In this document: piece by piece, positions 1,579 through 54,960 of the stretch
Position numbering within the stretch: position 1 is the stretch's first letter
How the letters are laid out: each line of letters begins with the position of its first letter
Assembly: GCA_002269645.1 (NCBI GenBank)
Contig: NIVC01002670.1
Span: 86,619 to 150,618, forward strand
DNA: 64,000 nt
From: Macrostomum lignano
Lineage: Eukaryota
Direction of reading: 5' to 3'
The notes under the pieces: generated by a model
Seen by the model: the letters and a program-made list of their open reading frames with translations, nothing else
Database searches by the model: none
Told to the model about the DNA's origin: nothing
Made by a program: the position numbers and the translations under genes

Positions 1579-4500
1579 CTATCTAACAAAGTCCAGCACT
1601 AATTCCACGTGGCGGCAATTTGGGAACAGATCGATAGGCTGGCAGCTGGCCAATCGGAATGGCCGGCCCGAGCCTTCAGGCATCAGCAGGCGGAGGAAAT
1701 TGTCGGTCGGCTGGCCCTCCGGCCGGCAGGAGATGTACACTATTCGGTCAACGGTCGGGCAGGCTCGGATTGCGGACACCGAGGCGTCGTCAAGGCCGTC
1801 GCGGGCCGGGTTCAGCACGCAGCAGACGCTGTCAGCAGAGAAGCAGCTGTCAATAGCTGACAGGCGATTAGCAAAGAAGGTGGCAGCGTCCTCGCAGTGA
1901 TATTGAAATGCGTTGCTAGGCAACCCGTTTAGCCTGGCGTTGTCAAGAGCGTCACGCACGGCGGACTGGTTGGAGTCGAAGCCGATTAGCTGGTCGAATT
2001 GCCGACTGTCGAACAGCACCTGGCCGACGACGCCGGTGCCGCAGAAGGCGTCTATAAGCAGACGGCGGCGTGGCGGCGATGACGGGGGCAGCTCCGCAGC
2101 CAGCAGCTGGCGCAGGTAGCCGTACAGGGTCTCAGCAGCTACCGTGTTGTTCTGAAAAAACGAATGCGGCCGAACTTTGAAGCGCCGGTCCAGCAGGCGC
2201 TGGTGCAGCGAGTCGCGGCCGAATAGGTGTCGCGGCTCCACAGGCTGGAAGCAGTTACTGCTGGCCTGGCTGTAGCCAGACACCAGGTTGAGGCCGGAGC
2301 GGAGCACCGCCGGGAAGAACTGGCGAGTCTGCAAATTAACACGTTGACATGCTAGACTAGAAGCTTTACAGGCTCGAATTGCTATTGAGAGAGACTTTCC
2401 GATAGGACATAATAAAAACGGCATTGAAATTGGCTCCAAATTTATTGTTAATTAGCAAATTTTCATGCACGGAAAGCTTATTACCGTTTTCCTTAGTTCC
2501 AGTCTAGGCATCAAGAAAGGGTCTGTAGCTAGACAGGGCATAGCTATCGAGAGGTAAGACCATAAGGAGGCCATGACCCCCCAATCGTCTGGAAAAGTAA
2601 TTGACGCCCCTTTGTACTCCTTTGGCGCTCCTAGTGCTGGTGTCCCCTGGTGCTGGTGTCCCCTGGTGCTGGTGTCTCCTGGCGCTGGTGTCCCTGATGC
2701 TGGTGTCCCCTGGTGCTGGCGCCCCTGGTGCTGGTGTCCCCTGGTGCTGGAGTCTCCTGGCGCTGGTGTCCCCTGGTGCTGGCGCCCCTGGTGCTGGTGT
2801 CTCCTGGCGCTGGTGTCCCCTGGTGCTGGCGCCCCTGGTGCTGGCGCCCCTGATGCTGGTGTCCCCTGGCGCTGGCGCCCCTGGTGATGGCGCCCCTGGT
2901 GATGGTGCCCCTGGTGCTGGTGTCCCCTGGTGCTGGCGCCCCTGGTGCTGGTGTCCCCTGGTGCTGGCGCCCCTGGTGCTGGCGCCCCCGATGCTGGTGT
3001 CCCCTGGCGCTGGCGCCCCTGGTGATGGCGCCCCTGGTGCTGGCGCCCCTGGTGCTGGCGCCCCTGGTGCTGGCGCCCCTGGTGCTGGCGCCCCTGGTGC
3101 TGGCGCCCCTGGTGCTGGCGCCCCTGGTGCTGGCGCCCCTGGTGCTGGCGCCCCTGGTGCTGGCGCCCCTGGTGCTGGCGCCCCTGGTGCTGGCGCCCCT
3201 GGTGCTGGCGCCCCTGGTGCTGGCGCCCCTGGTGCTGGCGCCCCTGGTGCTGGCGCCCCTGGTGCTGGCGCCCCTGGTGCTGGCGCCCCTGGTGCTGGCG
3301 CCCCTGGTGCTGGCGCCCCTGGTGCTGGCGCCCCTGGTGCTGGCGCCCCTGGTGCTGGCGCCCCTGGTGCTGGCGCCCCTGGTGCTGGCGCCCCTGGTGC
3401 TGGCGCCCCTGGTGCTGGCGCCCCTGGTGCTGGCGCCCCTGGTGCTGGCGCCCCTGGTGCTGGCGCCCCTGGTGCTGGCGCCCCTGGTGCTGGCGCACAG
3501 TAAAAAAAAATTTCCCGCCACAAATTAACACTAGAGCTTCACCAAGTTAAGCAGAGTTGGTCTCGGTTAGTATGCACTTGAGTAGGTTTCTTGTGTTACT
3601 CCCCAATAAACGAGTGGCACATTAAACGGAGCTCAAGACCACCCTGCTGGGATGGGGTATAGCAGCTCAGAGCTGACGTAGGCACACTGGGTGGCAGTTG
3701 TAGCCCCAACAGACATTTCTATCAACCGCACTAACCAGCTCAGACAGTAGCCGAGCCTCGGCCCCAGCTGGCAGCTGTCCGTGGTAGCAAACCTCCAGCA
3801 TCAGCTCGTCATCGTGATTAGTCCTGGCAACCAGGCCGGCCCAGGCCCCGTCTGGTTTCCTATGCTTATCGTAGGGATCGAATTGACTCTGGCCGCTGCG
3901 CAGGAAATCGGTGAATAATTGAAATACTCTGGCATGAATCGGGCAGGTGCTAGCCAGGTGTTCAACGCTGAATCCGACTCGGCGGTGCGGGAAGCCGGGC
4001 TCGAACATTCGCACCTGCATGCTGTGACCAACCAGCGGCCAGCCGTCCGGGTCGAACAGCACCGACGCGCTGTTCCGGTTGCGGCGCCACCAACCCCGGC
4101 CAGGCGGGTGCAGCACCGGTGGCACCGGGCACAGGGCTTCAGCTCGGCTGCCACCCTCGGCCTCGCCGCTGCGTAGGCAATTGGTTAAACGGCCTATTAG
4201 GGCCGCTACTCGGCGATGCTTGAGCTCAAGTTGAGCAGTGTAGGGCAGCGGCTGCAACGGCTGCACGTGCTGTCGGATTCGATCGTGAGGCCTGGCCACC
4301 CTGGACAGGACCGGGGAGGCGCGGAACGGCCGGCGCAGACAGCCGGCAGATGCGGGCACCGCGGCATCCAGACAGGCCGCCACTGCGCTACCTGCGACTG
4401 ATGCTGTTGCTGCCGCTGCCGACTGGAGGTACGAAAATAAGTTGTTAGATAAAGTGTGGTGCTGACACTAATGAACCTAACTATAGTGTGGTGCTGACAC

Positions 4501-6888
4501 TAATGAACCTAACTATAGTGTGGTGCTGACACTAATGAACCTAACTATAGTGTGGTGCTGACACTAATGAACCTAACTATAGTGTGGTGCTGACACTAAT
4601 GAACCTAACTATAGTGTGGTGCTGACACTAATGAACCTAACTATAGTGTGGTGCTGACACTAATGAACCTAACTATAGTGTGGTGCTGACACTAATGAAC
4701 CTAACTATAGTGTAGCACTGACACTAATGGACCTAACTATAGTGTAGCACTGACACTAATGAACCTAACTATAGTGTAGCACTGACACTAATGAACCTAA
4801 CTATAGTGTAGCACTGACACTAATGAACCTAACTATAGTGTAGCACTGACACTAATGAACCTAACTATAGTGTAGCACTGACACTAATGAACCTAACTAT
4901 AGTGTAGCACTGACACTAATGGACCTAACTATAGTGTAGCACTGACACTAATGAACCTAACTATAGTGTAGCACTGACACTAATGGACCTAACTATAGTG
5001 TAGCACTGACACTAATGAACCTAACTATAGTGTAGCACTGACACTAATGAACCTAACTATAGTGTAGCACTGACACTAATGAACCTAACTATAGTGTAGC
5101 ACTGACACTAATGAACCTAACTATAGTGTAGCACTGACACTAATGAACCTAACTATAGTGTAGCACTGACACTAATGAACCTAACTATAGTGTAGCACTG
5201 ACACTAATGAACCTAACTATAGTGTAGCACTGACACTAATGAACCTAACTATAGTGTAGCACTGACACTAATGAACCTAACTATAGTGTAGCACTGACAC
5301 TAATGAACCTAACTATAGTGTAGCACTGACACTAATGAACCTAACTATAGTGTAGCACTGACACTAATGGACCTAACTATAGTGTAGCACTGACATTAAT
5401 GGACCTAACTATAGTGTAGCACTGACACTAATGGACCTAACTATAGTGTAGCACTGACACTAATGGACCTAACTATAGTGTAGCACTGACACTAATGGAC
5501 CTAACTATAGTGTAGCACTGACACTAATGGACCTAACTATAGTGTAGCACTGACACTAATGGACCTAACTATAGTTTAGCACTGACACTAATGGACCTAA
5601 CTATAGTGTAGCACTGACACTAATGGACCTAACTATAGTGTAGCACTGACACTAATGGACCTAACTATAGTGTAGCACTGACACTAATGGACCTAAGTAT
5701 AGTGTAGCACTGACACTAATGGACCTAACTATAGTGTAGCACTGACACTAATGGACCTAACTATAGTGTAGCACTGACACTAATGGACCTAACTATAGTG
5801 TAGCACTGACACTAATGGACCTAACTATAGTGTAGCACTGACACTAATGGACCTAACTAAAGTGTAGCACTGACACTAATGGACCTAACTATAGTGTAGC
5901 ACTGACACTAATGGACCTAACTATAGTGTAGCACTGACACTAATGGACCTAACTATAGTGTAGCACTGACACTAATGGACCTAACTATAGTGTAGCACTG
6001 ACACTAATGAACCTAACTATAGTGTGGCACTGACACTAAAAGACCCAGTTGGAGTGTGGCACTGACACTAAAAGACCCAGTTGGAGTGTGGCACTGACAC
6101 TAAAAGACCCAGTTGGAGTGTGGCACTGACACTAAAAGACCCAGTTGGAGTGTGGCACTGACACTAAAAGACCCAGTTGGAGTGTGGCACTGACACTAAA
6201 AGACCCAGTTGGAGTGTGGCACTGACATTTAAAGACCCAGTTGGAGTGTGGCACTGACACTAAAAGACCCAGTTGGAGTGTGGCACTGACACTAAAAGAC
6301 CCAGTTGGAGTCTGGCACTGACACTAAAAGAGCCAGTTGGAGTGTGGCACTGATATAGTAATTGAAGCGAATGAAGCCAACTGAAAGCCGTGTATAAACA
6401 ATAAAATCACGATAGACGGCTTTCTGCAATTCGAAGCTATTGAAATCCGTGTAAACAGCGAATGGCCTGCTTATTAATACATTTTTAATACAAAAAATTG
6501 GAGACACGAAACAGATTACAAGAAAGACACAAAAAGACTGCCACAATTAACTGGAGTATAGAACATTAATTTTGTTAATAAATCTTTGCCTATTTTTATA
6601 TTGATATTAGAGTAACTAAATCATTCATTTCCAAACATGCATAATAATTAACAGATGGAAATAAAAAACGGTAGAAAAAAATGGAAATGCTTTCCTCGTG
6701 TTTTTTCAAGAGAATTTAATAGTAAATTTCATTGTGCAACAGAATTAAGTATTGTTACCTTTTAGCATAATGAGTTGAGTAAATACTGCATGTCGTACAA
6801 TAAGACTGCAAGATTCCCCCGATAAAGTTTCAAGATTCTTGCTTTTCAAAATCTTGTCCCTGCCGGAGTGCTCAGCAAGACTGGCCAT
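1579..6888 (-). CDS. TRMT2B: tRNA (uracil-5-)-methyltransferase, TrmA/RlmD family, TRMT2B-like
   Basis: Exons 4422-3736 (ccag|, |gttagt) and 2328-1579 (ttgcag|) join in phase 0. Candidate exon 1 at 6888-6787 (aaaATGGCC, phase 0) is less certain. Motifs PLQPLPYTAQLELK, FFQNN, DAFCGTG, VLNPARDGL, YISC (catalytic Cys) and DLFP..HVELV. NPAR rather than DPPR, and no RRM, favour TRMT2B over TRMT2A. Confidence 0.85.
2630..3497. repeat. 15-bp GC-rich intronic minisatellite (GCCCCTGGTGCTGGC)n
   Basis: Near-perfect from about 3040 to 3497, with degenerate 12/15-bp variants at 2630-3040. Source of the spurious GAPAP/QGRQH/LVLAP ORFs. Confidence 0.95.
4454..6350. repeat. 32-bp minisatellite (GTGTAGCACTGACACTAATGAACCTAACTATA and variants), about 59 copies
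   Basis: Period 32 (4454, 4486, ...), with variant blocks ordered along the array. Confidence 0.95.
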
Positions 6889-8422: not shown

Positions 8423-15325
<6,903 letters not shown>

Positions 15326-36389: not shown

Positions 36390-38680
36390 CTTACGGCGGA
36401 TCTGCCATCAATACCATCGGCAAAGTCAAGCTTCTGGTTGTATTTAACAACACCAGAGTGACTGCCATTTTCTACGTCGCCGACAATGAATCGGTGGGCC
36501 GGGTCCGGTCCCCGCACCGGGGAAGGCAGTCTTGAGTAATGACCAGACCTCTTTGGGCTGGATCCAGAGCGCCAAGGGGGTCAGATCGGTCGGCATGGCA
36601 AGACAATGGAAAATATGCGTGACGGTTTCGTCGTCCCGGCCGCATATGCGGCAAAGCAGTGAGGCCGACGTGTCAATTTTAGATTGATAGGTGGCGAGCA
36701 GCTTACAGTGACCGGAGCGCAGCTGGGCTAGAGTGATGCGCTGGCGACGGTTGCGAAGGCTCTCGGTGGTGCAGATGTTCGGCGCGCGCGAGCCAAGGAC
36801 CGGGTTTGGCGGCTGCTTGTTGAAGTGCTCGCTGACAAACGCAGTATGTATGGACTGCCGAGTATGCGAGGCGGAGGGAGGCAAAATCCGTGATGGGAGT
36901 CGAGTAGGATGATAGCCGATGCGAGCGAAAATGGCGTTGGAGAACGAACCAAGATTGCAGCGAATGGAGCGACGTGGCGAGGGGTCTTGGAAGAGCTGGT
37001 GATTAGGATGCCAGGAGGCCGAGCAGGAAGCCCAGCGACTCAAGGCGCTCAGAGTGCGCTTTAACAGGGAGCACGGCGCATTCAGAGTGAAAGTTCTCGA
37101 CCTGAGTGCAGTTGTGACACTCGGTGATGATTCGCAGAGCCACGTTCTGACAGCGCTGGAGCAGGTTCCAGCTGGTCTTGCTGAGGAGGGGCGACTAGAC
37201 AGGGGCGCAGTAGTTAAGTTGTGACCTGCAGATGGCTTCGAAGGACACGCTGAGAGTCTCTTTATCTTGGCCCCAGTGCGTGCCACAAAGAGCGCGTAGG
37301 ATGGGTGGATTTGGAGCGGACCTTGTTGCTGGTCAGTTTGGCATGAAAGCAAAGAAGGGGGTCGAACGTGACGCCCAGGATCTTCGGGTTAGTGCAGTAG
37401 GACAATGGCGAGCCGCACAGAAAGATCGGAGGAGACGAGTGAAATTCGTGGGTTTTGCTGGTAAAGATGGTAGCAGGTGAGTTGCCCAGCGAGAGCGGAA
37501 GGCTTTTAATTTCGAGATAGCGGCAGAGCTGATCGAGGTACGGTTGAATGAGCTCAGAGAGTTTAATGACAAACGGGCCGCGAGCGCAGATAGAAATGTC
37601 GTCGGCATACTGCGTAATTTGCAGGTTTGGCGGCGGACGCGGAAGGTCAGACATATAGAAAGCGGAAAGGAGAGGAGATAAAACTCCGCCTTGTGGGACT
37701 CCGACGTGCAGCGGGCGGGATTTAGAAAGAATAGTGCGATAATCGGGGAGCGACTGTTAAGATAAGCGTGAAGCCAGCGGACCAAAGCGTGCGGCAGAGA
37801 GGACTGAAGCAGCATCTCGCAGAGCTTGGTATGTTCGACTTTGTCAAAAGCGTTTTGGAGGTCGAGAGCGACAAGGAGACTACGGAGAGCTGGCTTCTGG
37901 GCGTTTAGGCCCTCACTGGTGAAGGTGGTCAAGCCGAGCAGAGCCGTGGTGGTGGAATGACGGTCGCGGTCTGCGTCGGTCCAAGAGCTTTATTCATCGG
38001 ACCAAAGTCGACGCCTCGTTGAAGCCGGTATCACAGCCAATGCGGAAGTTTTCGATCAGGCGGAAGATCACCCGAAAGGACATCAGTAATCAGTCGAATA
38101 GAGCGACCAGGCATCATGGAGAAGGTCAATGCCTTGAGTGGGTCAGCAAAGTGGTTGTGACACGCAACGAATCCAATAAAGTTCGTCTCTGCGTAGACCT
38201 GTGACAAGTTAACAAAGCGCAGACCGCTACCCTGTGCCGTCAATCGAGGACCTGTCAGCGAGCATTACCGGGTCGAAGTGCTTCAGCAAGCTGGACCTCC
38301 AACAAGGTTACCAGCAGATACTACTGCATCCTAACTCTCGAGGACTGAATTTCTTCATCCTCGATGCCGGCCTGTACGAGTTCATCGTGGTGCCATATTT
38401 GAGTCCAGCTCCGGAGCTGCCTTCCAGAGGGCCCTTCGGACAGTGCTTCAAGGAGCTCCAGGCGCCATCAAAATCGTTGACAAAATCCTGGTACACAGCA
38501 CGAACGAGACTGAGAATGAAAAGAACCTCCGTGAAGTCCTGGACACAAAATTCACCGCGAAGGCTTCACGCTCAACCTTGAGAAGTGCAAATTCAGGCAG
38601 CCAAGCGTCGAGTTCTTTGGGTTGGTGATCTTTTCAGATGGAATCAGAATGACCCAGTCCAACGTTGAGGGGATAGATCA
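36390..38680 (+). mobile_element. Ty3/Gypsy pol remnant (protease region and RT), interrupted by a LINE
   Basis: YGGSAINTIGKVKL...FYVADN before the insert. After it: KVRLCVDL, YPVPSIEDL...SKLDLQQGYQQILLHP, IVDKILVH and LNLEKCKFRQPSVEFFG, with frameshifts and stops. Confidence 0.8.
36490..37975 (-). mobile_element. 5'-truncated non-LTR retrotransposon (I/Nimb/Ingi-like RT and C-terminal CCHC)
   Basis: STTTALL, LLVALDLQNAFDKVEH, QYADD, PKILGVTFD and ITLAQLRSGHC...CRICGRDDETVTHIFHC, in broken frames. Confidence 0.85.
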
Positions 38681-39758: not shown

Positions 39759-40946
39759 ATGGAGGAGTCACTCGGTAGACTTGCCAGTTCGAGTAGCGCG
39801 ATGGTGGCCTGGTACCTGCTGGCAGCCACCACTGTAGCCATCCTGCTGCTGTGCCTCGCCGGCCTGCGCAGCTGCCTACTGCGCCGCTACCGGCTGGGCA
39901 GCCTCCTCATCGTGCGCTGGATCTGTCTCGCCGACATCTGCTTTGTCCTACACCGAGTTGTGTTTCTTCTGCTCACCGCCTTGCTGTCAACCGGACCGCC
40001 CGGCAGTAAGCTGATCATCACTTGGACATGTAAGCTCTACACTGCTCTGGAGTCGCTGCTAACGCTTGTGCAGACCTGGCTACTGGTCCTGCTGGCCATG
40101 GAACGGGCCGCAATGAAGCTGCGTCCCGATACCGGCCTTCGCTACTTCAACCGACTCCGCCTCCGCGTCGGGATTGCCATTGCCGGCATTCTTGCGTTCT
40201 CGCTGCACATCAACTACATCTATGTGTTCACGCCTGTTACGAGTGCCATTTTCAACGAACGGGCGCCAGGAGCAGCCGAGCTCAACTTTACAATGCCGTC
40301 GATGACCCCAGCTGTAAAAGTTGACTTTGAGCCGCACCCTCAGATGGGGTACAATGATTCTGTCGAATACCAGGAAGGGTGCGCCATCGACTTTGGCTTC
40401 GAGACATTCTACAACTACGTGGAGATGGCCAACATCCTGCTTGGAGTCTACCTGCCCGTGCTCATCGTCAACACCTGCGTGGTGCTCCTGTGCTCGCATT
40501 ACGCAGCTCGCGGCTTCACCCGGCTATCGAATCAGCAGGCTGCCCGGCTGTTGCCGCCCGGCTCAGCTGGCAATCAGCGCGCCCTCGCCAGCCTAGCCCG
40601 ATTCAACAACACTATCGACGCGCTGTTCCTGGCGCTGAGCCTGTTCTCCTACGTGCCAATGGAGTCTATCGGAATCTACAAAGCCTTCCTCGTGCACACG
40701 TCCAAAGCGTCTCACCAGTTCCTGTACGAGCTGGTCTGCAGCATGTTCATGCCGGCGAAGAACCTGCTCGACGCGCTGCTCATCGGACCGACGCTGATCT
40801 ACCTGCTGAGCGCGGCACGACTTGGTTATCCCAAGCCGCCGCGTAGGCCAGAGCAGAGTGACTGCAACAACCGTGTCACCGCGAATGCCGAGAGCGCCGT
40901 CGACATCGAGTTGGACGACCTCAACCCAGGCGGTAACATCGTCTGA
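39759..40946 (+). CDS. Intronless class A (rhodopsin-like) GPCR, probable peptide receptor
   Basis: 395-aa ORF with about seven hydrophobic segments. TM2 ICLADICF, TM3 C(KLY)...LLAMER (DRY-like), an ECL2 Cys and TM6 FSYVP. GC-rich coding composition. Confidence 0.85.
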   Translation: MEESLGRLASSSSAMVAWYLLAATTVAILLLCLAGLRSCLLRRYRLGSLLIVRWICLADICFVLHRVVFLLLTALLSTGPPGSKLIITWTCKLYTALESLLTLVQTWLLVLLAMERAAMKLRPDTGLRYFNRLRLRVGIAIAGILAFSLHINYIYVFTPVTSAIFNERAPGAAELNFTMPSMTPAVKVDFEPHPQMGYNDSVEYQEGCAIDFGFETFYNYVEMANILLGVYLPVLIVNTCVVLLCSHYAARGFTRLSNQQAARLLPPGSAGNQRALASLARFNNTIDALFLALSLFSYVPMESIGIYKAFLVHTSKASHQFLYELVCSMFMPAKNLLDALLIGPTLIYLLSAARLGYPKPPRRPEQSDCNNRVTANAESAVDIELDDLNPGGNIV

Positions 40947-41954: not shown

Positions 41955-44900
41955 CAACAACAACAACACAACAACAGATTACGCAGTTAGCGTCACAGGG
42001 CGCGCTTCAAGGCCAGGTCGCGTTCACGCCACCGGCTGAATCCGGGGCGCCGGCGTCAGCCAGCAGGCAGTCGACGAAACGCCGAGTGCGCGCCTGCCCC
42101 CGCAGCGTTAGCAGCAGCACCTCCTGCGGGGGCTTGTGAGCACCCTCCAAGAAGGAGCTAAAGGAGACATGGACAACCTCCAGCAGCTCCGGGGGCCCCT
42201 GGACCTAAACCCAAGTCTGGGAATGACTAATGGCTCACACCACCACCGACCACCCGGAGAGGACGAGCCAACCGTCACCGCAGGCAACCTGCACCGTGTC
42301 CTGCGGCTCCGCGGGGGCAGGAGTCCCGACAGTTGCCACGACAGCGGGCCACGACGGCGACGAAACCGTCGGAAACGCGATTTAACCCCCCAACCTAGCC
42401 AAGAGCTCTTGATTATGCAGTTTAACTGCAATGGCTTGCGCAGCCGTACTACGGAGCTGGCTAATCGGTTGGAGGCTGAACGCCCAGCCGTCGTTCTACT
42501 CCAAGAGACGAAGCTCCTACCTAAAGACGATTTCCGTGCACCTGCGGGCTACGTTGTGGCCGCCCGCTGTGATGGCGTCCCCAATGACAACGACCCGAAC
42601 ACACTCCCCCAGGATGCACAGAGGACGGGTGAACCTGCTCACCGGGGCCCCGGACCCCCCCCCCCCGGAAACAAGCACGTTGCAGGACCCGCCAGCCAGA
42701 TGATCAAGACGGATGTAAGTCTTGGAGAACCGCATGCACCAACCGGCAACTGGAAGACATACCGGAAGCAACCCCGCCTGGAAGCAGCTCTACCGCCCAA
42801 GCCGCGGCCACGACGGCACCTCCGACTGACCGGGCCCTCGGACCGACCTGTAGACGCCTTGCCCCGAACGACCGCACGAACTACTGTAGCGGATGCATCT
42901 CTCGCCGCAAGTGCCTACGTCGCAGCGCTGCATCTGCGCCAACCTCCTCGCAACAACAGTCCCAGCCCTCGGACCTCTCCAGCTCCGCTAATCCAAAAAA
43001 CTCTAAAAACATGACGGGGCGAGGAGGGACCATGGTCATGGCCTGCGAGGACCTCTGTTACTCCAAGCTCGACTGCGGCCCACCCAGCAGCGAAATGGAC
43101 GTCGCCGCCTGTAGGATTTGCCCCCTCAAACAGCCGGACTTGCTCGTCGCCTCGGTCTATATCCCGCCGGTTAGCGCTCAAAGACAGCAGAGCGACCGTG
43201 AATCGGGCTGCCCTCTGGACCGTATCCCTCACTCAGGACGGGCTGTCATCGGTGGCGATTTCAATGCTCATGGCGGCTGGGACCAGCATATGGAAGAGGA
43301 AAGCCGCGGACGCGCTGTCGAGGAATGGGCAGCGCGCTCCGGCCTCACGATCTGCAATGGCACGAACCACACCAGGACTAGCCCGGCCACAGGCAAGAGA
43401 AGCAGCCCCGATATCAGCTGCGCCTCTGGGGCCTTAGCGGAGACTGCCATCTCCAGCTGGAGAACCGGCCGTGACCACCTGCCCATCTTCTTCAGCATCC
43501 AGGGCCATCGCCCAACGCAGAACAAGAGAGGTCCAGCCCGCTGGAACTTCCGCAAGGCCGACTGGCGCACCTTCAGCGACCACCTGCAGCTCGCGTTGAG
43601 CACGCCCCAACTGGAAGCCAGCAGGACACTGGACCAACAGACCGCCGCACTCAATGAAGAGATCCTCAGGGCTGCACACCGTGCGATCCCGCGAGGCAGC
43701 AGAGCTGGCCGAAGAGCCCCTTTCTGAAACGAGAAATGTCAGCCAGCGTGCGACGCGGTGCAAGAAGCCAGGACCACGGCGGAGACCACAAAGACACCGG
43801 AAGCCATGGCCGCTTACAACAGAGCCAGACACCACACGACCAAAACCATCCGCACTGAACGCCGAGCCTGTCTGGAATCAAAGGCCAGCGAGCTTAATGT
43901 CAACAGCGACCTTTACGCCCTGCTCCGAAACCTCCGAGGGGAGTCAGCTAAGAAGCGAGATGCTGCTACTATCTATAGCAGCGCAAGCAAAGGGAGACCA
44001 GCACGTACCTGCCACTCCGACAAGGATAAGGCAGATCTTTTCTGCCAGCTGTACGCTGAAGTCTCCAGGGTGCCGCGTAGACCTATCCGCTACGAAGTCA
44101 AAGCCGGACTGCGGAACCAGACGGGGCACCTGGACGCATCGGAGGAGAACTTCTCGGTCTCCGAACTCCGAACTGCTCTGCGTAAACTTAAATCGGGCAA
44201 AGCCGCCGGAGCGGACGGAATCCACAACGAAATGCTCAAACACCTGCCACCGGCCGGCGACTCTGCGCTGCTAGAGCTCATCAATCGCAGCTGGAGAGAA
44301 GGTAAGACACCCAACGCCTGGCGAGGGGCAGTTATCATCCCGATCCCCAAAAAAAGGAAAAGACCCGGAACAGCCTAGCAGTTACCGCCCTGTCGCCCTG
44401 ACCAGCTGCGTGGCCAAGTGTGCGGAAAGGATGGTGCTGGCTAGACTTAACTGCTTCCTCGAAACTAACGGAAAGATCTCCGCTAGTCAAGACGGCTTTC
44501 GCAGGCACCGGAGCTGCGAAGAGCAGATCGGCCGCATCTGCCAAGATATCTTTGACGGACTCGAGGCTAGCCCGTCCCTGCGCAGCATCCTGGCTCTGCT
44601 CGATTTCAGCCGCGCCTATGACAGGGTGTGGCGCCGGGCTCTCTACGCCAAGCTCCTTAGAATGGGCGTAAGCCACCGCATGGTCCAGTGGATCAGGGGG
44701 TTCCTCTGTCAAAGACGCGCCCGAGTTCGCTGGAACGCCGCCCTCAGCCGCGAGAGAAGTTTCCGCGAAGGCCTCCCACAGGGCAGCGTCATCGCCCCGA
44801 CGCTGTGGAATGTGTACGTCAACGATCTGGTCGAAGCCCTTAATCAAGCTGCCCCGGGCATTGGCATTAGCCTCTACGCCGATGACAGCGCACTGTTGAG

Positions 44901-47050
44901 CACTGCCAACTCGCTCTACCGCTGTGCCGTCAATCTGCAACCGGCCCTGGATGCGGTACACACCTGGTGCGTCACCTGGAAGGTCGAAATGAGCCTAGCT
45001 AAGTGCTGCTACACCACCTTCACCCTCGCGCCAAGTGAATGCAATGGAAAAACGCGCCCAGATCTGAACATCGCGGGAGAGCCGCTGGCGTACGAGGCCC
45101 ACCCGACCTTCCTGGGGGTGACCCTCGACGGCCAGCTCACTTTTAATCAGCACGCCCGTGACATTTGCAAGCGCATGGCAGCCCGCAGAAGACCACTGGC
45201 GGCGCTTGCCACCAGATCGAATGGCGCAAGTTTCAAAGTTCTCCGAATGGCCTACATCTCTACGGTCCGGGCCGTAGCCGACTTCGCAGGTGGCGTCTGG
45301 GCGCCTTCGCGTCCCCGAGCACACGCCTCCTTGTGGAGCGCCAACAGAACTGCGCCGCCCGCATCATCACAGGGTGCATCCAGCCGACAAATATCAGAGC
45401 GCTCTTGGCCGCCGCCGACCTGCCGCCGCTCGGTCACCTGTTCCTGGAAAGAGCAGCGGTCCTCCGTGAAAGGGTCCTACGGCTCCAGCCAGACGTACCA
45501 GCGCACCAAACGGCACTCAGAACCTGCAGACCCCGACTAAAATCCCGAGCCCACGAAAGCTGGATCAGAGATCAGCAGCAGACACCGGAGCGGCCGATGC
45601 TGGTCAATGACTACAAGCGACCACACCGTGGCTGCTGGAGGCGCGCAGCACAAGAATTGACCGACGAACTGGACCTACATACGCGCGCGCCGTATACGGC
45701 GCCGGGTCCACCGTGGACCTTCACCGACAACGTCGTCTTCGACCTCAATCTGGCAGACGCCTGCAACCGCCGACTCCCCGACAGCATTCGGCGAACCCGT
45801 ACTCTCGAATATCTGGCTTCCAGACCTGTGCCGGACATCTAAATCTGGACTGATGGCAGCGCCACCGAAGGCCACAGAAATGGACGCGGAGCCGCGGTCA
45901 TCACGACTAGGCTCTGGGGACAGGTGCGCACTGCTGCGGCTGGAGCGATCTGCAGTAGCACCGCAGCGGAGTTGACTGCTATAGCCACCGGCCTTGCAAG
46001 CATCCGACACCTGGACACGACATCCTCACTGATAGCCAAGCGGCGCTCCTCACACTCATGCGCGGTCCTTGCGACCAGAGCGACCCGCGGGGCGCGGAGT
46101 GCTGGTCCCACCTCGGCGCGATGCAGCACCGCATCCGCCTCACCTGGGTGCCGGCCCACGTTGGGGTGGAAGGCAACGAAAGAGCGGATGCTGCTGCCAA
46201 CCGCGCCGTGAATCTCCGCCAAGAAGAACAGGCAATCCCACTTTGCACTGCCAAGGCGCTCATCCACAGAGCTAGGCGTCGCCTCGACCGTGACTTCTGG
46301 GGACGCAGCGCACCATGGACTCACCCCGACCGCATCAGCCGAGCGGAGGCAACGGCGGTCTACCAGCTCCGCGCAGGCTGCAGCACCGCCTGTGCCGCTA
46401 CCCGCCACCGCATCGGCATTGCTGACTCGCCGCGGTGTCCGGACTGCGGTGAGCCAGACACCGAGAGTCACCTGTTAGACGACTGCCCCCGCGGAGACCA
46501 CGCCCGCGCTGTCCACCCCCTCGACCTCAACGACGCGGGCGGGATCTGCCGCTTTCTCCGGGTGGTGGGCCGACCCCTCGGCCGGCCAAGCCCCCAGCCG
46601 CCTGCCGGCGGCGTCGAGGGCTCGGTGTAGAGAGAGAGAGAGCACCTCCTGCACCGGCTCTGGGCAGTACGACTCGGCGCGGAGTATGTGGCCTGCCAGT
46701 TGGAGTCGCCGACGGCGCAACAGGTCGCTTGGACGGACCAGGCCGGCGCGGTGATACAAAGCCGCGTTGGTCACTCGCTCGTAGCCGATCTTGAAGACGC
46801 CGCGTCAACTTATTGCTCGAGCGACTCCGTCAGCGTCCAGGTCTCGGCGTTGTACAACAGGACGGTCTCGATCAACGCCTGGAACAACGCCGCCCTCTGG
46901 CGGTCTCGGACTGCAGGACTGCCGTCACAGAACGAAAGATAGCCCAAGCAAGCCCGCGGCGACGCCGCAAATCCTCGCGTTCTTTCTTCTTTCGCATTCA
47001 GGCATCGGCGCTACCGCAGGAACAGAACGTCAGCTGGCTGGATCAGCCGG
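41955..47050 (-). mobile_element. 3' fragment of an RTE-like LINE, split by the Ingi-like insertion
   Basis: 46645-47050 reads LFQALIETVLLYNAETWTLT...RRRLQLAGHILRAESYCPEPVQEVL. It continues left of the insert (42127-41990) as QEVLLLTLRGQARTRRFVDCLLADAG. (TTG)n tail at 41955-41977. Confidence 0.8.
42128..46640 (+). mobile_element. Near-full-length Ingi/I-group non-LTR retrotransposon (APE-RT-RNase H-CCHC), disrupted by frameshifts and stops
   Basis: 12-bp TSD AGCACCTCCTGC at 42116-42127 and 46641-46652, and a (GA)n tail. APE: IMQFNCNG, LLQETKL, SVYIPP, GGDFNAH, SPDIS, DHLP. RT: SSYRPVALTS, QDGFR, LDFSRAYD, GLPQGSV, YADD, FLGVTLD. RNase H: IWTDGS, AELTAI, WVPAHVGVEGNERAD. C-terminal CPDCGEPDTESHLLDDC. 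Confidence 0.93.
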
Positions 47051-47324: not shown

Positions 47325-47658
47325 CAGGGGTCGGCAAACTCCGGCCTCTCTATCCGGCCCTCGGGGTCCTTTGAAACTTCACAATGGCAGTCCGGCTCGC
47401 TCAAGGCTTGTGTCTCTTCTCAGTTCTCTCTCTCCTCTCCTCTCCTCTCCTCTCCTCTCCTCTCCTCTCCTCTCCTCTCCTCTCCTCTCCTCTCATCTCT
47501 CTCCTCTCTTCTATTCTCTTCTCTCATCGCATCTCTCATTTCACCTCTTTTCTTTCTCTCTCCTATATTCCCCCTCTCTCTCATTTGGAACGCAGCAATG
47601 TTCTACGAGCGTAGATTCTTGATCTGGCCCTTAAGGTAGAAAAGCTTTTCTACCCCTG
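47325..47658. mobile_element. hAT (Charlie-like) MITE with an internal (CTCTC)n tract
   Basis: Ends CAGGGGT... and ...TACCCCTG. Near-perfect 8-bp TSD GTGTAAAC (47317-47324) and GTGTAAAG (47659-47666). Confidence 0.75.
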
Positions 47659-52869: not shown

Positions 52870-54960
52870 CTTGAGTCAGTCTACGCGCACTGGACCGAGG
52901 TTGAAACGCACGACAGCCTTCGTGACTTCGTGACTATTCTAACTACAACACTACTTGACACCTACTGGCATCGCGGTCAGACCGCAGTACTGACCACGGT
53001 TGGCTCGGACGGCCGACCTCGGCTGCGACAGCACAGCATCAGCATAATAGCAGGGACACACAGAGGGAAGCGCAGCGCACAGCGCCGTTCTGAGCGGAGG
53101 CGCCAGAGCAACCGGTGAGGGCGACTCCGTGGCGCAGCCAGACGCCAGTCGCCTCCGGCCTCTGCTACCACAAACCTGGATCCGCCGGTTGGCGCCGGGG
53201 ACCAAGACCCCCAGCTGTACCAGGTGGCCGCCTGAGGCTCTGCAATCTGAACTGCCGGGCCCTAATGGCCCACTGTTGGTGGTGCTGCTCGGGGACCTAG
53301 ATGCAGTTACGCGGACATGGATGCGTTGGAGCACCTGCTCGACCGGCTGGACCTGGTGTCCGCTAACACTCAGTTACACAAGCCTCCCTCGCGCCTGGTC
53401 ACCTTTGCGGGCTGCAAGAGGAGGCGCACAATGCACGCGAGCGGAACACAACGAAGTGGTTAGCGCAACTCGATCACGCGCTGGTCCCGACTCGCCGCGT
53501 CGTTTACTGCGACACCGTCCAGCTCCAGATTGACAAGCTAGTCAAAGTGGCTCCCATCGCCGGCCTTGTGGTCAAAACGCTTAAAGACCAAGGTGCTCAC
53601 CGTGCTGACTGACATCCCCAGTGGACCTGACATGACATGCCGCGGCGCAGACGGGTGGAAGACCCTACTCCTTCGGATTCGCCTGGCCGGCCTATCGATC
53701 CATCCGGATCGTCCTTCAGTCAGAAGCGCTGGCCAACCGCCAGAGGGCTCGGTTCTGGCAGGCGGTAGTCGACACCATCCTATTGTACAATGCCGAGACG
53801 TGGACGCTGACGGCCATGCTGAAGCGGCAGCTGGACTCGGCGGCTGCTCCGCGAAGCCTTTTGCCCCCAGCCTCTGCAGGACAGGCTGCTGCTCCAAGCC
53901 TCTGCAGGACAGGCTGCTGCCCCAAGCCTCTGCAGGACAGGCTGCTGCCCCAAGCCTCTGCAGGACAGGCTGCTGCCCCAAGCCTCTGCAGGACAGGCTG
54001 CTGCCCCAAGCCTCTGCAGGACAGGCTGCTGCCCCAAGCCTCTGCAGGACAGGCTGCTGCCCCAAGCCTCTGCAGGACAGGCTGCTGCCCCAAGCCTCTG
54101 CAGGACAGGCTGCTGCCCCAAGCCTCTGCAGGACAGGCTGCTGCCCCAAGCCTCTGCAGGACAGGCTGCTGCCCCAAGCCTCTGCAGGACAGGCTGCTGC
54201 CCCAAGCCTCTGCAGGACAGGCTGCTGCTCCAAGCCTCTGCAGGACAGGCTGCTGCCCCAAGCCTCTGCAGGACAGGCTGCTGCCCCAAGCCTCTGCAGG
54301 ACAGGCTGCTGCCCCAAGCCTCTGCAGGACAGGCTGCTGCCCCAAGCCTCTGCAGGACAGGCTGCTGCCCCAAGCCTCTGCAGGACAGGCTGCTGCTCCA
54401 AGCCTCTGCAGGACAGGCTGCTGCCCCAAGCCTCTGCAGGACAGGCTGCTGCCCCAAGCCTCTGCAGGACAGGCTGCTGCCCCAAGCCTCTGCAGGACAG
54501 GCTGCTGCCCCAAGCCTCTGCAGGACAGGCTGCTGCCCCAAGCCTCTGCAGGACAGGCTGCTGCCCCAAGCCTCTGCAGGACAGGCTGCTGCCCCAAGCC
54601 TCTGCAGGACAGGCTGCTGCCCCAAGCCTCTGCAGGACAGGCTGCTGCCCCAAGCCTCTGCAGGACAGGCTGCTGCTCATATTGCAGGGCACATTTAGGC
54701 GGGGCAAGGCCGGCATCCGTCGATACTCTACTCTTCTGGATTGCGTCATTTGTTTTTTCTTCGGGTCGCGGTCATTGTCGCTAGACGTTGCCGATAGGGC
54801 CGGATGCCTAGCACCATACAGCCAGGGGGCGCGGCTGAGCAACCCCACGCGGGCGGACAGCAGACGACGGAGTCCAATTTGCGGCCTGCGGCGAGTGACC
54901 GAGTCCCGGAGCGCAGGGCTCCTCCGCAGGCGCCTTACGCTGTAAAAACCGCCGCCCGCC
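52870..54960 (+). mobile_element. Scrambled RTE-like LINE remnant (APE and RT C-terminal pieces)
   Basis: RLCNLNCR, VVLLGDLDA, LEHLLDRLDLVSANTQ..KPPSRLVTF and ILLYNAETWTLTAMLKRQLDSAAA. A further minus-strand piece at 55040-55250 reads LYRAETL. Confidence 0.7.
53866..54676. repeat. 28-bp minisatellite (GCTGCTGCCCCAAGCCTCTGCAGGACAG), about 29 copies, inside the RTE remnant
   Basis: Direct observation. The 28-aa periodicity of the spurious ORFs equals three units. Confidence 0.96.

What the first reader, a model, noticed from the sequence alone, without database searches (positions are those of the whole stretch)
42289..42318. Ubiquitin C-terminus mimic (LHRVLRLRGG) at the start of a LINE ORF: candidate DUB-processed retrotransposon polyprotein
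Seen: in frame with the APE domain, about 40 codons after the first ATG (42169), the element encodes LHRVLRLRGG, which is 9/10 identical to the ubiquitin C-terminus LHLVLRLRGG. It is followed by RSPDSCHDSGP, a basic run RRRRNRRKR, and then the first APE motif (IMQFNCNG). Established: deubiquitinases cut ubiquitin precursors after LRLRGG; cytopathic pestiviruses use captured ubiquitin as a processing signal; related APE-type LINEs (L1Tc/ingi, some CR1/L2) place a 2A StopGo peptide at this same position. No DxExNPGP 2A motif is present here. Inference: this family replaces 2A with a host-protease site that removes the leader and exposes an N-terminal Arg (an N-degron) plus an NLS on the APE-RT-RNase H protein, coupling maturation to turnover. 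Caveat: the leader does not look like a full ubiquitin fold, which many DUBs need, and this copy is frameshifted.
Basis: partly seen in the sequence, partly recalled or inferred. Interest (0 to 1): 0.85.

Follow-up and report, generated by a model that had tools for sequence, protein, structure and literature searches.

The report
Ubiquitin-tail mimic replacing LINE 2A
A flatworm-type jumping gene (LINE) carries, where its relatives have a ribosome-skipping 2A peptide, an 11-residue copy of ubiquitin's tail that selection has kept unchanged in two very divergent elements, so it is probably a working signal, perhaps a host-protease cut site, though cleavage is untested.

Summary
Observation confirmed. 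Window 42289-42318 (+) encodes LHRVLRLRGG, in frame with ATG 42169 and the APE domain of one dead APE-RT-RNase H LINE (~41975-46645). It matches ubiquitin residues 67-76 at 9/10.

It is neither chance nor decay. A Macrostomum lignano LINE (L090; PAA56246.1/PAA91395.1) is only ~49-54% identical in protein. It carries the same NLHRVLRLRGG at the same place, with 8 synonymous and 0 non-synonymous differences. This is the longest identical run between the two elements.

105 of 123 relatives have a canonical 2A (PA[WH]LA.LLL[LRK]AGD[IV]ExNPGP) at this position. Anchored on the conserved Asp, LLLRAG becomes LRLRGG by two point changes. A beach-sand contig (L089) has an intermediate, VLRLRGA-DATEGPGN. 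The motif therefore probably evolved from the 2A's leucine-rich half after NPGP was lost, not from captured ubiquitin.

There is no ubiquitin fold in the 32-50 aa leader and no protease in these elements. The residue after GG is Arg here but Asp in the relatives.

Deubiquitinase (DUB) cleavage is the leading mechanism but is untested (confidence ~0.4). Rivals are a binding or targeting peptide and a nascent-chain stall helix.

Verdict: new variant of a known kind; interest 0.65.

The parts
41975..42168 (+). 5' end / 5' UTR of the LINE (boundary approximate)
   Evidence: Composition switches from an AT-rich (CAA)n flank to GC-rich sequence. An in-frame stop lies at 42106-42108 upstream of the ORF.
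42169..42285 (+). Short leader peptide (39 codons from ATG 42169, or 21 from ATG 42223); no recognisable domain
   Evidence: It cannot be aligned with the L090 leader apart from an 'MT' start and a Pro/acidic stretch (pN 0.47).
42286..42318 (+).
   Evidence: Identical in L090 at 2148-2180, with 8 synonymous and 0 non-synonymous differences. It is the longest identical run between the two elements. It matches ubiquitin residues 67-76 at 9/10.
42319..42414 (+). Linker with the Arg-rich run RRRRNRRKR (42352-42378); the first residue after GG is Arg
   Evidence: Comparable basic linkers follow the 2A in relatives L002, L007, P0108 and P0109. The linker is poorly conserved (pN 0.49).
42415..42591 (+). 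APE endonuclease, N-terminal part (MQFNCNG...LLQETKL...)
   Evidence: Pfam PF03372, residues 83-141. 50-58% identical to relatives.
42592..43142 (+). Family-specific insert inside APE. It is Pro-rich and carries a Cys motif, CRRLAPNDRTNYCSGCISRRKC, at 42849-42914 in frame 0. A frameshift lies within the insert.
   Evidence: The same kind of insert, with CxxxxxxxxxWCxxCxxxxxC, is seen in L002, L007, P0115, P0121, P0147, P0159 and P0161.
43143..43490 (+). APE endonuclease, C-terminal part
   Evidence: Pfam PF14529, residues 45-160 of ORF 43011-43727.
44416..45123 (+). Reverse transcriptase domain
   Evidence: Pfam PF00078, E 4.9e-30. Best database relatives are 49-61% identical.
45843..46630 (+). 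RNase H and C-terminal region, ending at stop 46628-46630, followed by (AG)n to ~46644
   Evidence: Pfam PF00075; tblastn to the RNase H regions of relatives; sequence.

Best explanation
The element is a dead copy of a single-ORF APE-RT-RNase H LINE. It belongs to a clade whose ORF normally begins with a very short leader that ends in a StopGo/2A peptide.

In the lineage that includes this copy and a Macrostomum lignano element, the NPGP core of the 2A was lost. The leucine-rich N-terminal half of the 2A was remodelled in place into NLHRVLRLRGG. The typical family sequence LLLRAG-D becomes LRLRGG-D by two point changes. The new peptide reproduces ubiquitin's beta5 strand and tail, and has since been held invariant by purifying selection.

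The most likely function is a recognition and cleavage signal for host ubiquitin-tail-specific proteases. These would cut after Gly-Gly and detach the 32-50 residue leader from the endonuclease-RT protein. That would take over the separating job the 2A did in the ancestor, and would leave a new N-terminus (Asp or Arg) followed by an Arg-rich stretch.

Shown: the motif, its frame, its conservation, its position relative to 2A, and the absence of a ubiquitin fold or an element-encoded protease.
Inferred: derivation from 2A, cleavage, the identity of the protease, and any consequence for stability.
For: Conservation. L090 (M. lignano) and the window share 11/11 residues with 8 synonymous and 0 non-synonymous codon differences. 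Flanking leader and linker have pN 0.47-0.49 and the APE N-terminal part has pN 0.30; pS is about 0.75 throughout. The motif is longer than any identical run in the APE or RT catalytic blocks. The two elements are only ~0.49 identical over the mid-region plus RT, no closer than either is to 2A-bearing relatives.

Position. 105 of 123 relatives with at least 30 aa upstream of the APE start have NPGP there. MAFFT places VLR-LRGG under L[VI]R-LRAGD of the 2A.

Path from 2A. The family logo is PA[WH]LA.LLL[LRK]AGD[IV]ExNPGP. L089 reads VLRLRGA-DATEGPGN, with remnants of D..E..PG in register.

Mimicry pattern. All six tail residues that deubiquitinases contact (L71-G76), plus H68 and V70, are kept. 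The one mismatch (L69 to R) is a buried core residue in ubiquitin (ubiquitin structure: own knowledge).

Cleavability. The residue after GG is never Pro.

Literature. 2A at the N-terminus of APE-LINE ORF2 is established (PMC3708506). All known 2As need a terminal PGP, so this motif cannot work as StopGo (PMC12338488, PMC12846837).
Against: There is no ubiquitin fold upstream. Cellular deubiquitinases hydrolyse bare LRGG-type peptides orders of magnitude more slowly than ubiquitin fusions (own knowledge).

No protease domain was found in the window element, L090 or L089.

Only two independent lineages carry the full motif. The third, L089, has Gly-Ala, which is a poor deubiquitinase substrate in ubiquitin.

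Both motif-bearing copies are themselves defective, so selection is inferred for their active ancestors.

No family consensus could be built, because the host genome was not searchable.
Confidence: 0.4

Rival explanations
1. The motif is functional but is not cut. It is a binding or targeting peptide at the N-terminus of the ORF protein. For example, it could be a decoy that docks into ubiquitin-tail pockets of host deubiquitinases or ubiquitin-binding proteins to recruit or blunt them. Or it could form part of the Arg-rich nuclear/nucleolar or RNA-binding N-terminal region.
For: The same conservation evidence applies. The motif is followed directly by Arg-rich runs in all three elements. No ubiquitin fold is available to make it a good protease substrate. 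Relatives in this wider group are linked to the ubiquitin system: P0151 has an OTU domain, and DUB domains fused to 2A-bearing ORF2p are reported in PMC13405545.
Against: The motif occupies exactly the slot of a peptide whose only known job is to separate leader from ORF (PMC3708506). The terminal Gly-Gly, the hallmark of a scissile site, is conserved together with the strand residues. The linker after it is not conserved (pN 0.49).
Confidence: 0.28
2. The motif is the surviving 'stall helix' half of the old 2A. It acts inside the ribosome exit tunnel to slow or throttle translation of the ORF without separating the chain. Its likeness to ubiquitin is incidental.
For: It is derived from the leucine-rich N-terminal half of 2A. 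A 2026 preprint proposes that leucine-rich 2A-like helices reduce protein output, including in LINE ORF2p (PMC13405545).
Against: In that study, reduction-class peptides still carry a canonical or near-canonical C-terminal core, which is absent here. The motif has fewer leucines than family 2As (Leu replaced by Arg at -5). In working 2As of this family the N-terminal half varies freely, whereas here 11 residues are invariant at greater divergence. That pattern points to sequence-specific recognition.
Confidence: 0.15
3. The motif is a chance resemblance or a neutral relic of a decayed 2A in a dead copy, with no function.
For: This copy is dead. Arg, Leu and Gly are common in GC-rich DNA. LRLRGG alone is expected about 0.02 times per window, so hundreds of times per genome. 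This was my own working idea.
Against: The identical 11-mer occurs with only synonymous differences in an element ~50% diverged. Under the flank or APE substitution rates, 7-11 non-synonymous differences were expected and none was seen (my rough Poisson estimate from the rates: probability about 1e-3 to 2e-5).
Confidence: 0.07
4. The motif is a captured 3' end of a host ubiquitin gene, for instance by template switching at the LINE 5' end, as pestiviruses capture ubiquitin.
For: It matches ubiquitin residues 67-76 at 9/10, including L67, H68 and V70, which the 2A ancestry does not obviously explain.
Against: There is no similarity to ubiquitin upstream of residue 65-66 in any frame. Both elements share the same two non-ubiquitin residues (Asn, Arg), so the origin was single. 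The Asp after GG and the L089 intermediate fit the 2A register. Only two point changes are needed from the family's LLLRAG.
Confidence: 0.05

Closest known systems
N-terminal 2A/StopGo peptides of APE-type non-LTR retrotransposons (L1Tc/Ingi; CR1, L2, Rex1 and Crack elements; Odon et al. 2013, PMC3708506)
   Same: Same place in the same kind of single-ORF element: a short leader, then the signal, then a basic linker or PHD finger, then APE. Direct relatives of this element carry a canonical 2A. The motif appears to descend from the 2A's N-terminal half.
   Different: The defining D[VI]ExNPGP core is gone, so ribosomal skipping cannot be the mechanism. The conserved part is the upstream half, recast as LRLRGG.
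Ubiquitin and ubiquitin-like precursor processing (polyubiquitin, Ub-ribosomal protein fusions, ISG15 LRLRGG, FUBI-eS30) by deubiquitinases
   Same: Identical six-residue tail LRLRGG plus beta5 residues L67, H68 and V70. It is followed by a non-Pro residue, as required for cleavage of ubiquitin fusions.
   Different: There is no beta-grasp domain. The whole leader is 32-50 residues with no ubiquitin-family match.
Ubiquitin inserts as processing signals in cytopathic pestiviruses, and LXGG sites cut by viral papain-like or OTU proteases
   Same: A mobile or replicating element uses a ubiquitin-type Gly-Gly junction to mature a polyprotein.
   Different: The pestiviral inserts are whole ubiquitin monomers captured from the host. 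LXGG sites are cut by a virus-encoded protease. Here there is neither a captured fold nor an element-encoded protease in the motif-bearing elements.
LINE ORF2 proteins fused to deubiquitinase domains (Josephin, OTU; PMC13405545 preprint) and relative P0151 found here
   Same: This shows that LINEs of this broad group engage the ubiquitin system. P0151 combines 2A, PHD, APE, RT, OTU and RNase H.
   Different: Those elements carry the enzyme. This one carries what looks like a substrate or ligand motif.

Membership tests
2A / StopGo ribosome-skipping peptide | C-terminal core (D/G/C/N)(V/I)ExNPG|P; a terminal PGP is obligatory | tested here: not met
   No NPGP or PGP follows the motif in the window (RSPDS) or in L090 (DSNVT). 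L089 has a degenerate DATEGPGN. The requirement is taken from PMC12338488 and PMC12846837.
2A / StopGo ribosome-skipping peptide | Leucine-rich upstream half positioned about 8-19 residues before the skip site, at the N-terminus of LINE ORF2 | tested here: inconclusive
   Position and partial sequence agree with the family logo: L at -6, L at -4, R at -3, G at -1 and D at 0. However, R at -5 and G at -2 are each seen in only 3% of family 2As.
Ubiquitin / ubiquitin-like protein | Beta-grasp domain of about 76 residues | tested here: not met
   Pfam finds no family at E<=10 in the window or L090 leaders. phmmer against PDB aligns only ubiquitin residues 65-77. The leader is 32-50 aa, and an in-frame stop lies upstream in the window.
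Ubiquitin / ubiquitin-like protein | C-terminal LRLRGG tail ending in Gly-Gly | tested here: met
   LRLRGG is exact in the window and in L090. L089 has LRLRGA.
Deubiquitinase-processed fusion | Actual endoproteolysis after Gly-Gly by a ubiquitin-specific protease | not testable with these tools
   This needs expression and N-terminal mapping. The only sequence prerequisite checked is a non-Pro residue after GG: Arg or Asp.
APE-type non-LTR retrotransposon with RNase H (I/Ingi/Nimb-like group; clade not resolved) | APE endonuclease, reverse transcriptase and RNase H in one ORF, in that order | tested here: met
   Pfam PF03372/PF14529, PF00078 and PF00075 lie in order on the + strand. The intact relative L089 has a 1403-aa ORF with the same order.
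APE-type non-LTR retrotransposon with RNase H (I/Ingi/Nimb-like group; clade not resolved) | Assignment to a named clade by RT phylogeny against reference elements (Repbase/Dfam) | not tested
   No reference LINE library was available. Database names such as 'transposon BS' and 'jockey' are automatic labels.

The most novel reading that the evidence does not exclude
A retrotransposon lineage has exchanged a ribosome-skipping 2A for a minimal ubiquitin-tail mimic, 11 residues with no ubiquitin fold. Host deubiquitinases cut it, releasing the leader and creating an ORF protein with a destabilising Asp or Arg N-terminus. This would be the first host-deubiquitinase-matured retrotransposon protein. 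It would also be a natural example of fold-independent cleavage at LRLRGG.
Probability: 0.3. Interest if true: 0.85.

Novelty: new variant of a known kind. Interest (0 to 1): 0.65.

Why it matters
How single-ORF LINEs make their proteins is poorly understood, and the role of the N-terminal 2A in them is still debated.

A lineage that lost the 2A core, yet froze the neighbouring residues into a copy of ubiquitin's tail, is a natural experiment. It shows that something at this position is needed. It also suggests that detaching the leader, or engaging the ubiquitin machinery, is the function selection acts on.

If cleavage is real, it would show that an 11-residue ubiquitin-tail mimic is enough for processing in vivo. 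That would interest deubiquitinase enzymologists. It could also serve as a compact alternative to 2A or ubiquitin-fusion tags.

If the motif is not cut, it would be a transposon-encoded ubiquitin-tail decoy, which would also be new.

The case also shows how few mutations (two) separate a 2A helix from a ubiquitin tail.

Tried and rejected
1. A word-indexed protein search with the window's N-terminus found nothing. Relatives were reached only through the RT, through profiles built from relatives' N-termini, and through the exhaustive profile search.

2. After my working hypothesis was that LRLRGG is a neutral decay product of a 2A in a dead copy. I rejected it when P0161/L090 showed the identical motif with only synonymous differences.

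3. MAFFT aligned P0117/L088 'WLRRQLRTG' with the motif. I rejected this alignment: in L088 that stretch lies after the PHD finger, and a decayed 2A (METVQPW) lies before it.

4. The JGI metagenome scan with the N-terminal profile returned mostly bacterial exonuclease III-like loci, none of them useful.

5. Degenerate-DNA scans for LHRVLRLRGG in prokaryotic genomes and viral contigs gave only out-of-context chance hits in GC-rich bacteria. None was followed by an APE domain.

6. The attempt to identify the host by exact look-up of the neighbouring 395-aa membrane protein failed. The host is inferred to be a Macrostomum-like flatworm, but only from the L090 relative and one shared repeat.

7. 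L091 (upstream of P0157) is a decayed 5' end with in-frame stops and was uninformative.

8. A search for an element-encoded protease, using the P0151 OTU domain in tblastn and Pfam, found none in the window, L090 or L089.

9. No second copy of the element exists in the window. The only other RLRGG strings in the window lie in a 28-bp satellite.

10. Structure prediction of the leader was not run. A single-sequence model of a 50-residue low-complexity peptide would not be informative.
Full report
1. WHAT IS AT THE COORDINATES

Window 42289-42318 (+) reads CTG CAC CGT GTC CTG CGG CTC CGC GGG GGC, which is LHRVLRLRGG. These are codons 41-50 of the frame that opens at ATG 42169. A second in-frame ATG lies at 42223.

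The frame continues through RSPDSCHDSGP, the Arg run RRRRNRRKR (42352-42378) and LLIMQFNCNG. Pfam's endonuclease model starts at that point.

The surrounding element runs from about 41975 to 46645. It has APE, RT (E 4.9e-30) and RNase H in order on the + strand. It ends at a stop at 46628-46630, followed by (AG)n. It is a dead copy: the ORF pieces sit in frames 1, 0, 0, 1, 0 and 2, which implies at least four frameshifts and one in-frame stop. There is no second copy in the window.

2. CHANCE

In 300 block-shuffles of the window, LRLRGG arose 0.023 times per window. A match of 9/10 or better to ubiquitin's LHLVLRLRGG never arose. The exact 10-mer occurs only about three dozen times in the six frames of 596 Gb of prokaryotic DNA, and never upstream of an endonuclease domain.

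A genome-wide scan would still turn up bare LRLRGG strings by chance. The case therefore rests on relatives.

3. RELATIVES HAVE A 2A PEPTIDE HERE

The N-terminus alone found nothing in the word-indexed search. The RT found relatives at 49-61% identity. Most are on unnamed ENA metagenome or assembly contigs, and some are from the barnacle Amphibalanus.

Fetching their DNA showed a canonical 2A in frame just upstream of APE:
- L001: LLQQCGDIHPNPGP, then a Cys-rich zinc-finger-like stretch, then APE.
- L007: AYLALVRLRAGDIERNPGP, then a basic linker, then LMQFNCNG.
- L002: AHLALLLMRAGDVERNPGH, with the same layout.

A profile of these N-termini recovered many more relatives. Of 123 relatives with at least 30 residues upstream of the APE start, 105 have NPGP there. 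Their logo is PA[WH]LA.LLL[LRK]AGD[IV]ExNPGP.

This agrees with the published finding that APE-type LINEs place a 2A in the N-terminal region of ORF2, sometimes followed by a PHD finger, and often in single-ORF elements (PMC3708506).

4. FIRST READING, THEN REVERSED

MAFFT aligns the window's VLR-LRGG under L[VI]R-LRAGD of the 2A. Because the copy is dead, I first took LRLRGG for a neutral wreck of a 2A.

The exhaustive profile search overturned this. One hit, P0161, reads ...DDNANLHRVLRLRGGDSNVTASPRQTRSSKKRGRGHRSGSELQVLQFNCNG. P0161 is PAA56246.1 of Macrostomum lignano. Its cluster mate PAA91395.1 reads on through APE.

Its locus, L090 (GCA_002269645.1, NIVC01002647.1), holds a LINE that is a different family from the window's:
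- 54% identical over the N-terminus.
- 53% identical over the first 150 RT residues.
- About 0.49 identical over the mid-region plus RT.
- No closer to the window than either is to 2A-bearing relatives.

Yet the 11 residues NLHRVLRLRGG are identical. The codons are AAC CTA CAT CGG GTT CTC CGT CTA CGC GGA GGC in L090 and AAC CTG CAC CGT GTC CTG CGG CTC CGC GGG GGC in the window. That is eight synonymous and no non-synonymous differences.

By Nei-Gojobori counting:

| Region | pS | pN |
|---|---|---|
| Motif (11 codons) | 0.75 | 0.00 |
| 20 codons upstream | 0.77 | 0.47 |
| Linker | 0.74 | 0.49 |
| APE N-terminal part | 0.80 | 0.30 |

At the flank or APE rates, 7-11 non-synonymous differences were expected and none was seen. 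My rough Poisson estimate from these rates is a probability of about 1e-3 to 2e-5.

The motif is the longest run of identity between the two elements. It exceeds LLDFSRAYD and FREGLPQG in RT and VLLQETKL in APE.

Both elements share the two residues that differ from ubiquitin (Asn for Thr66, Arg for Leu69). The motif therefore has one origin and was then conserved.

5. WHERE THE MOTIF CAME FROM

Anchor the sequences on the Asp that follows G-G in L090 and L089 and that begins the 2A core, D[VI]ExNPGP. The family consensus at positions -6 to -1 is then L L L [L/R/K] A G, against L R L R G G in the motif.

Family members with LLLRAGD (P0116, P0120, P0149, P0153) are two single-nucleotide changes away: Leu to Arg at -5 and Ala to Gly at -2. 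Each of these two residues is seen in only 3% of working 2As.

L089 is a 4.7-kb beach-sand metagenome contig with a nearly intact 1403-aa ORF and an RT 54.5% identical to the window's. It begins GTPVLRLRGADATEGPGNRQRQRR...LIQFNCNG. It shares VLRLRG. It has Ala instead of the second Gly. It still shows D..E..PG in the 2A register. It looks like an intermediate.

Capture of a ubiquitin gene end is not needed to explain the motif, and the data do not support it. There is no ubiquitin similarity beyond residue 65 in any frame.

The 2A ancestry does not obviously explain the extra matches to ubiquitin at L67, H68 and V70. The one mismatch, L69 to R, falls on a residue that is buried in ubiquitin's core, whereas H68 and V70 are on its recognition surface (own knowledge of the structure). 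That pattern is what mimicry of an exposed strand without a fold would look like. It rests on very few positions, however.

6. WHAT IT PROBABLY DOES

The motif cannot be a StopGo site. Every characterised 2A needs a terminal PGP (PMC12338488, PMC12846837).

In working 2As of this family the upstream half varies freely at modest divergence. For example, it is LVRLR in L007 and LLLMR in L002, which are 68% identical in RT. Here 11 residues are frozen at about 50% divergence. That points to recognition by a sequence-specific partner rather than a general helix or hydrophobicity requirement.

Three things make cleavage after Gly-Gly by host ubiquitin-tail proteases the most economical mechanism. 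The exact LRLRGG is present. The next residue is not Pro. The motif takes over the slot of a chain-separating signal. I put this at about 0.4.

The main obstacle is real. The leader is 32-50 residues with no ubiquitin-family match, and cellular deubiquitinases generally need the ubiquitin body.

None of the three elements encodes a protease. A more distant 2A-bearing relative, P0151, does carry an OTU deubiquitinase domain between RT and RNase H. A recent preprint reports Josephin and OTU domains fused to 2A-bearing LINE ORF2 proteins (PMC13405545). So the wider group is entangled with the ubiquitin system.

Rivals:
- An uncut binding or targeting peptide, such as a decoy for ubiquitin-tail pockets or part of the Arg-rich N-terminus (about 0.28).
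- A surviving 'stall helix' that throttles translation (about 0.15; the core motif such peptides retain is missing here).
- No function (about 0.07).
- Ubiquitin capture (about 0.05).

Arg follows GG in this copy, but Asp follows in L090 and L089. Both are destabilising N-terminal residues in the Arg/N-degron pathway (textbook knowledge), but the sample is three. The Arg-rich linker is shared with 2A-bearing relatives, so it is not specific to this solution.

7. COMPARISON WITH WHAT IS KNOWN; NOVELTY

The element is an ordinary member of the RNase H-bearing APE LINEs. Its clade was not resolved, because no reference library was available.

The N-terminal 2A of such LINEs is known. A ubiquitin-tail-like motif in its place is not: a full-text search for LRLRGG together with 'retrotransposon' found no paper.

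The motif fails membership of the 2A family (no PGP) and of the ubiquitin family (no fold). It resembles ubiquitin-precursor and ISG15 processing sites, ubiquitin inserts in pestiviruses, and viral LXGG sites. Unlike these, it has neither a fold nor its own protease.

I class it as a new variant of a known kind: N-terminal leader signals of LINE ORFs.

8. LIMITS

- Only two independent full-motif lineages were found, plus one partial lineage.
- PAA56246.1 and PAA91395.1 are the same insertion in duplicated loci.
- The 5' boundary of the L090 element is inferred only from the apparently uninterrupted paralogue PAA93933.1.
- The host of the window is not identified. A Macrostomum-like flatworm is likely, but this rests on L090 and one shared repeat at 70% identity.
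- No family consensus could be made.
- All statements about cleavage are inference.

Noticed in passing
window 42592-43142 (Cys motif at 42849-42914, frame 0); also L002, L007 and L090: The APE domain of this LINE group is split by a long Pro-rich insert carrying a conserved Cys motif (C-x9-WC-x2-C-x5-C; for example CRTRFRDDRSRWCGKCRAHRRGGC in L002). In the M. lignano element (P0287) the insert additionally holds a PHD-like finger. A zinc-binding module inside an APE endonuclease is unusual.
   Followed up: partly
P0151 (1683-aa relative, JGI metagenome), residues 1301-1391: A 2A + PHD + APE + RT LINE relative carries an OTU deubiquitinase domain (Pfam PF02338, E 4.5e-9; DGNCFYRA) between RT and RNase H. 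No such domain is present in the window element, L090 or L089.
   Followed up: partly
L090 about 1900-4930 (M. lignano NIVC01002647.1); proteins PAA56246.1, PAA91395.1, PAA93933.1: The M. lignano LINE sits in frame after 'QQQSLM' of a polyQ C2H2 zinc-finger gene, and it is annotated as part of that gene's protein. The paralogue PAA93933.1 continues with zinc-finger sequence instead. These are probably chimeric gene models caused by the insertion.
   Followed up: partly
window 13187-13810: A 28-bp satellite (about 21 copies, with higher-order periods of 174 and 203 bp). Its translation contains PRLRGG, the only other RLRGG strings in the window. They are unrelated to the LINE.
   Followed up: yes
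window 46650-47000 (-), and 53736-53813: A 3' fragment of a different LINE abuts the element tail to tail on the minus strand. It has the C-terminal motif ...LYHRAGLVRPSDLLRRRRLQLAGHILR. An 82% identical 78-bp piece recurs at 53.7 kb.
   Followed up: no
window 37337-37914 (-): An RT fragment of another, distant LINE (31-38% identical to the element's RT).
   Followed up: no
L004 about 3874 (-): An unrelated AT-rich LINE in a relative's contig also starts with a 2A (LLLQWDIEVNPGP) followed directly by APE. This shows how common the arrangement is in these genomes.
   Followed up: no
P0003, P0020 and P0030: LINE reverse transcriptases close to this element are deposited as proteins of bacterial MAGs ('Cyanobacteria bacterium J06598_3', 'Candidatus Omnitrophica'). 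This is almost certainly eukaryotic contamination of the bins.
   Followed up: no
window 39759-40946 (+): An intact 395-aa multi-pass membrane protein ORF lies 1 kb upstream of the LINE. It has no Pfam match and no exact match in the gene-position collection.
   Followed up: partly
window 47413-47536: A (TCTCC)n microsatellite of about 20 copies lies just downstream of the LINE cluster.
   Followed up: yes
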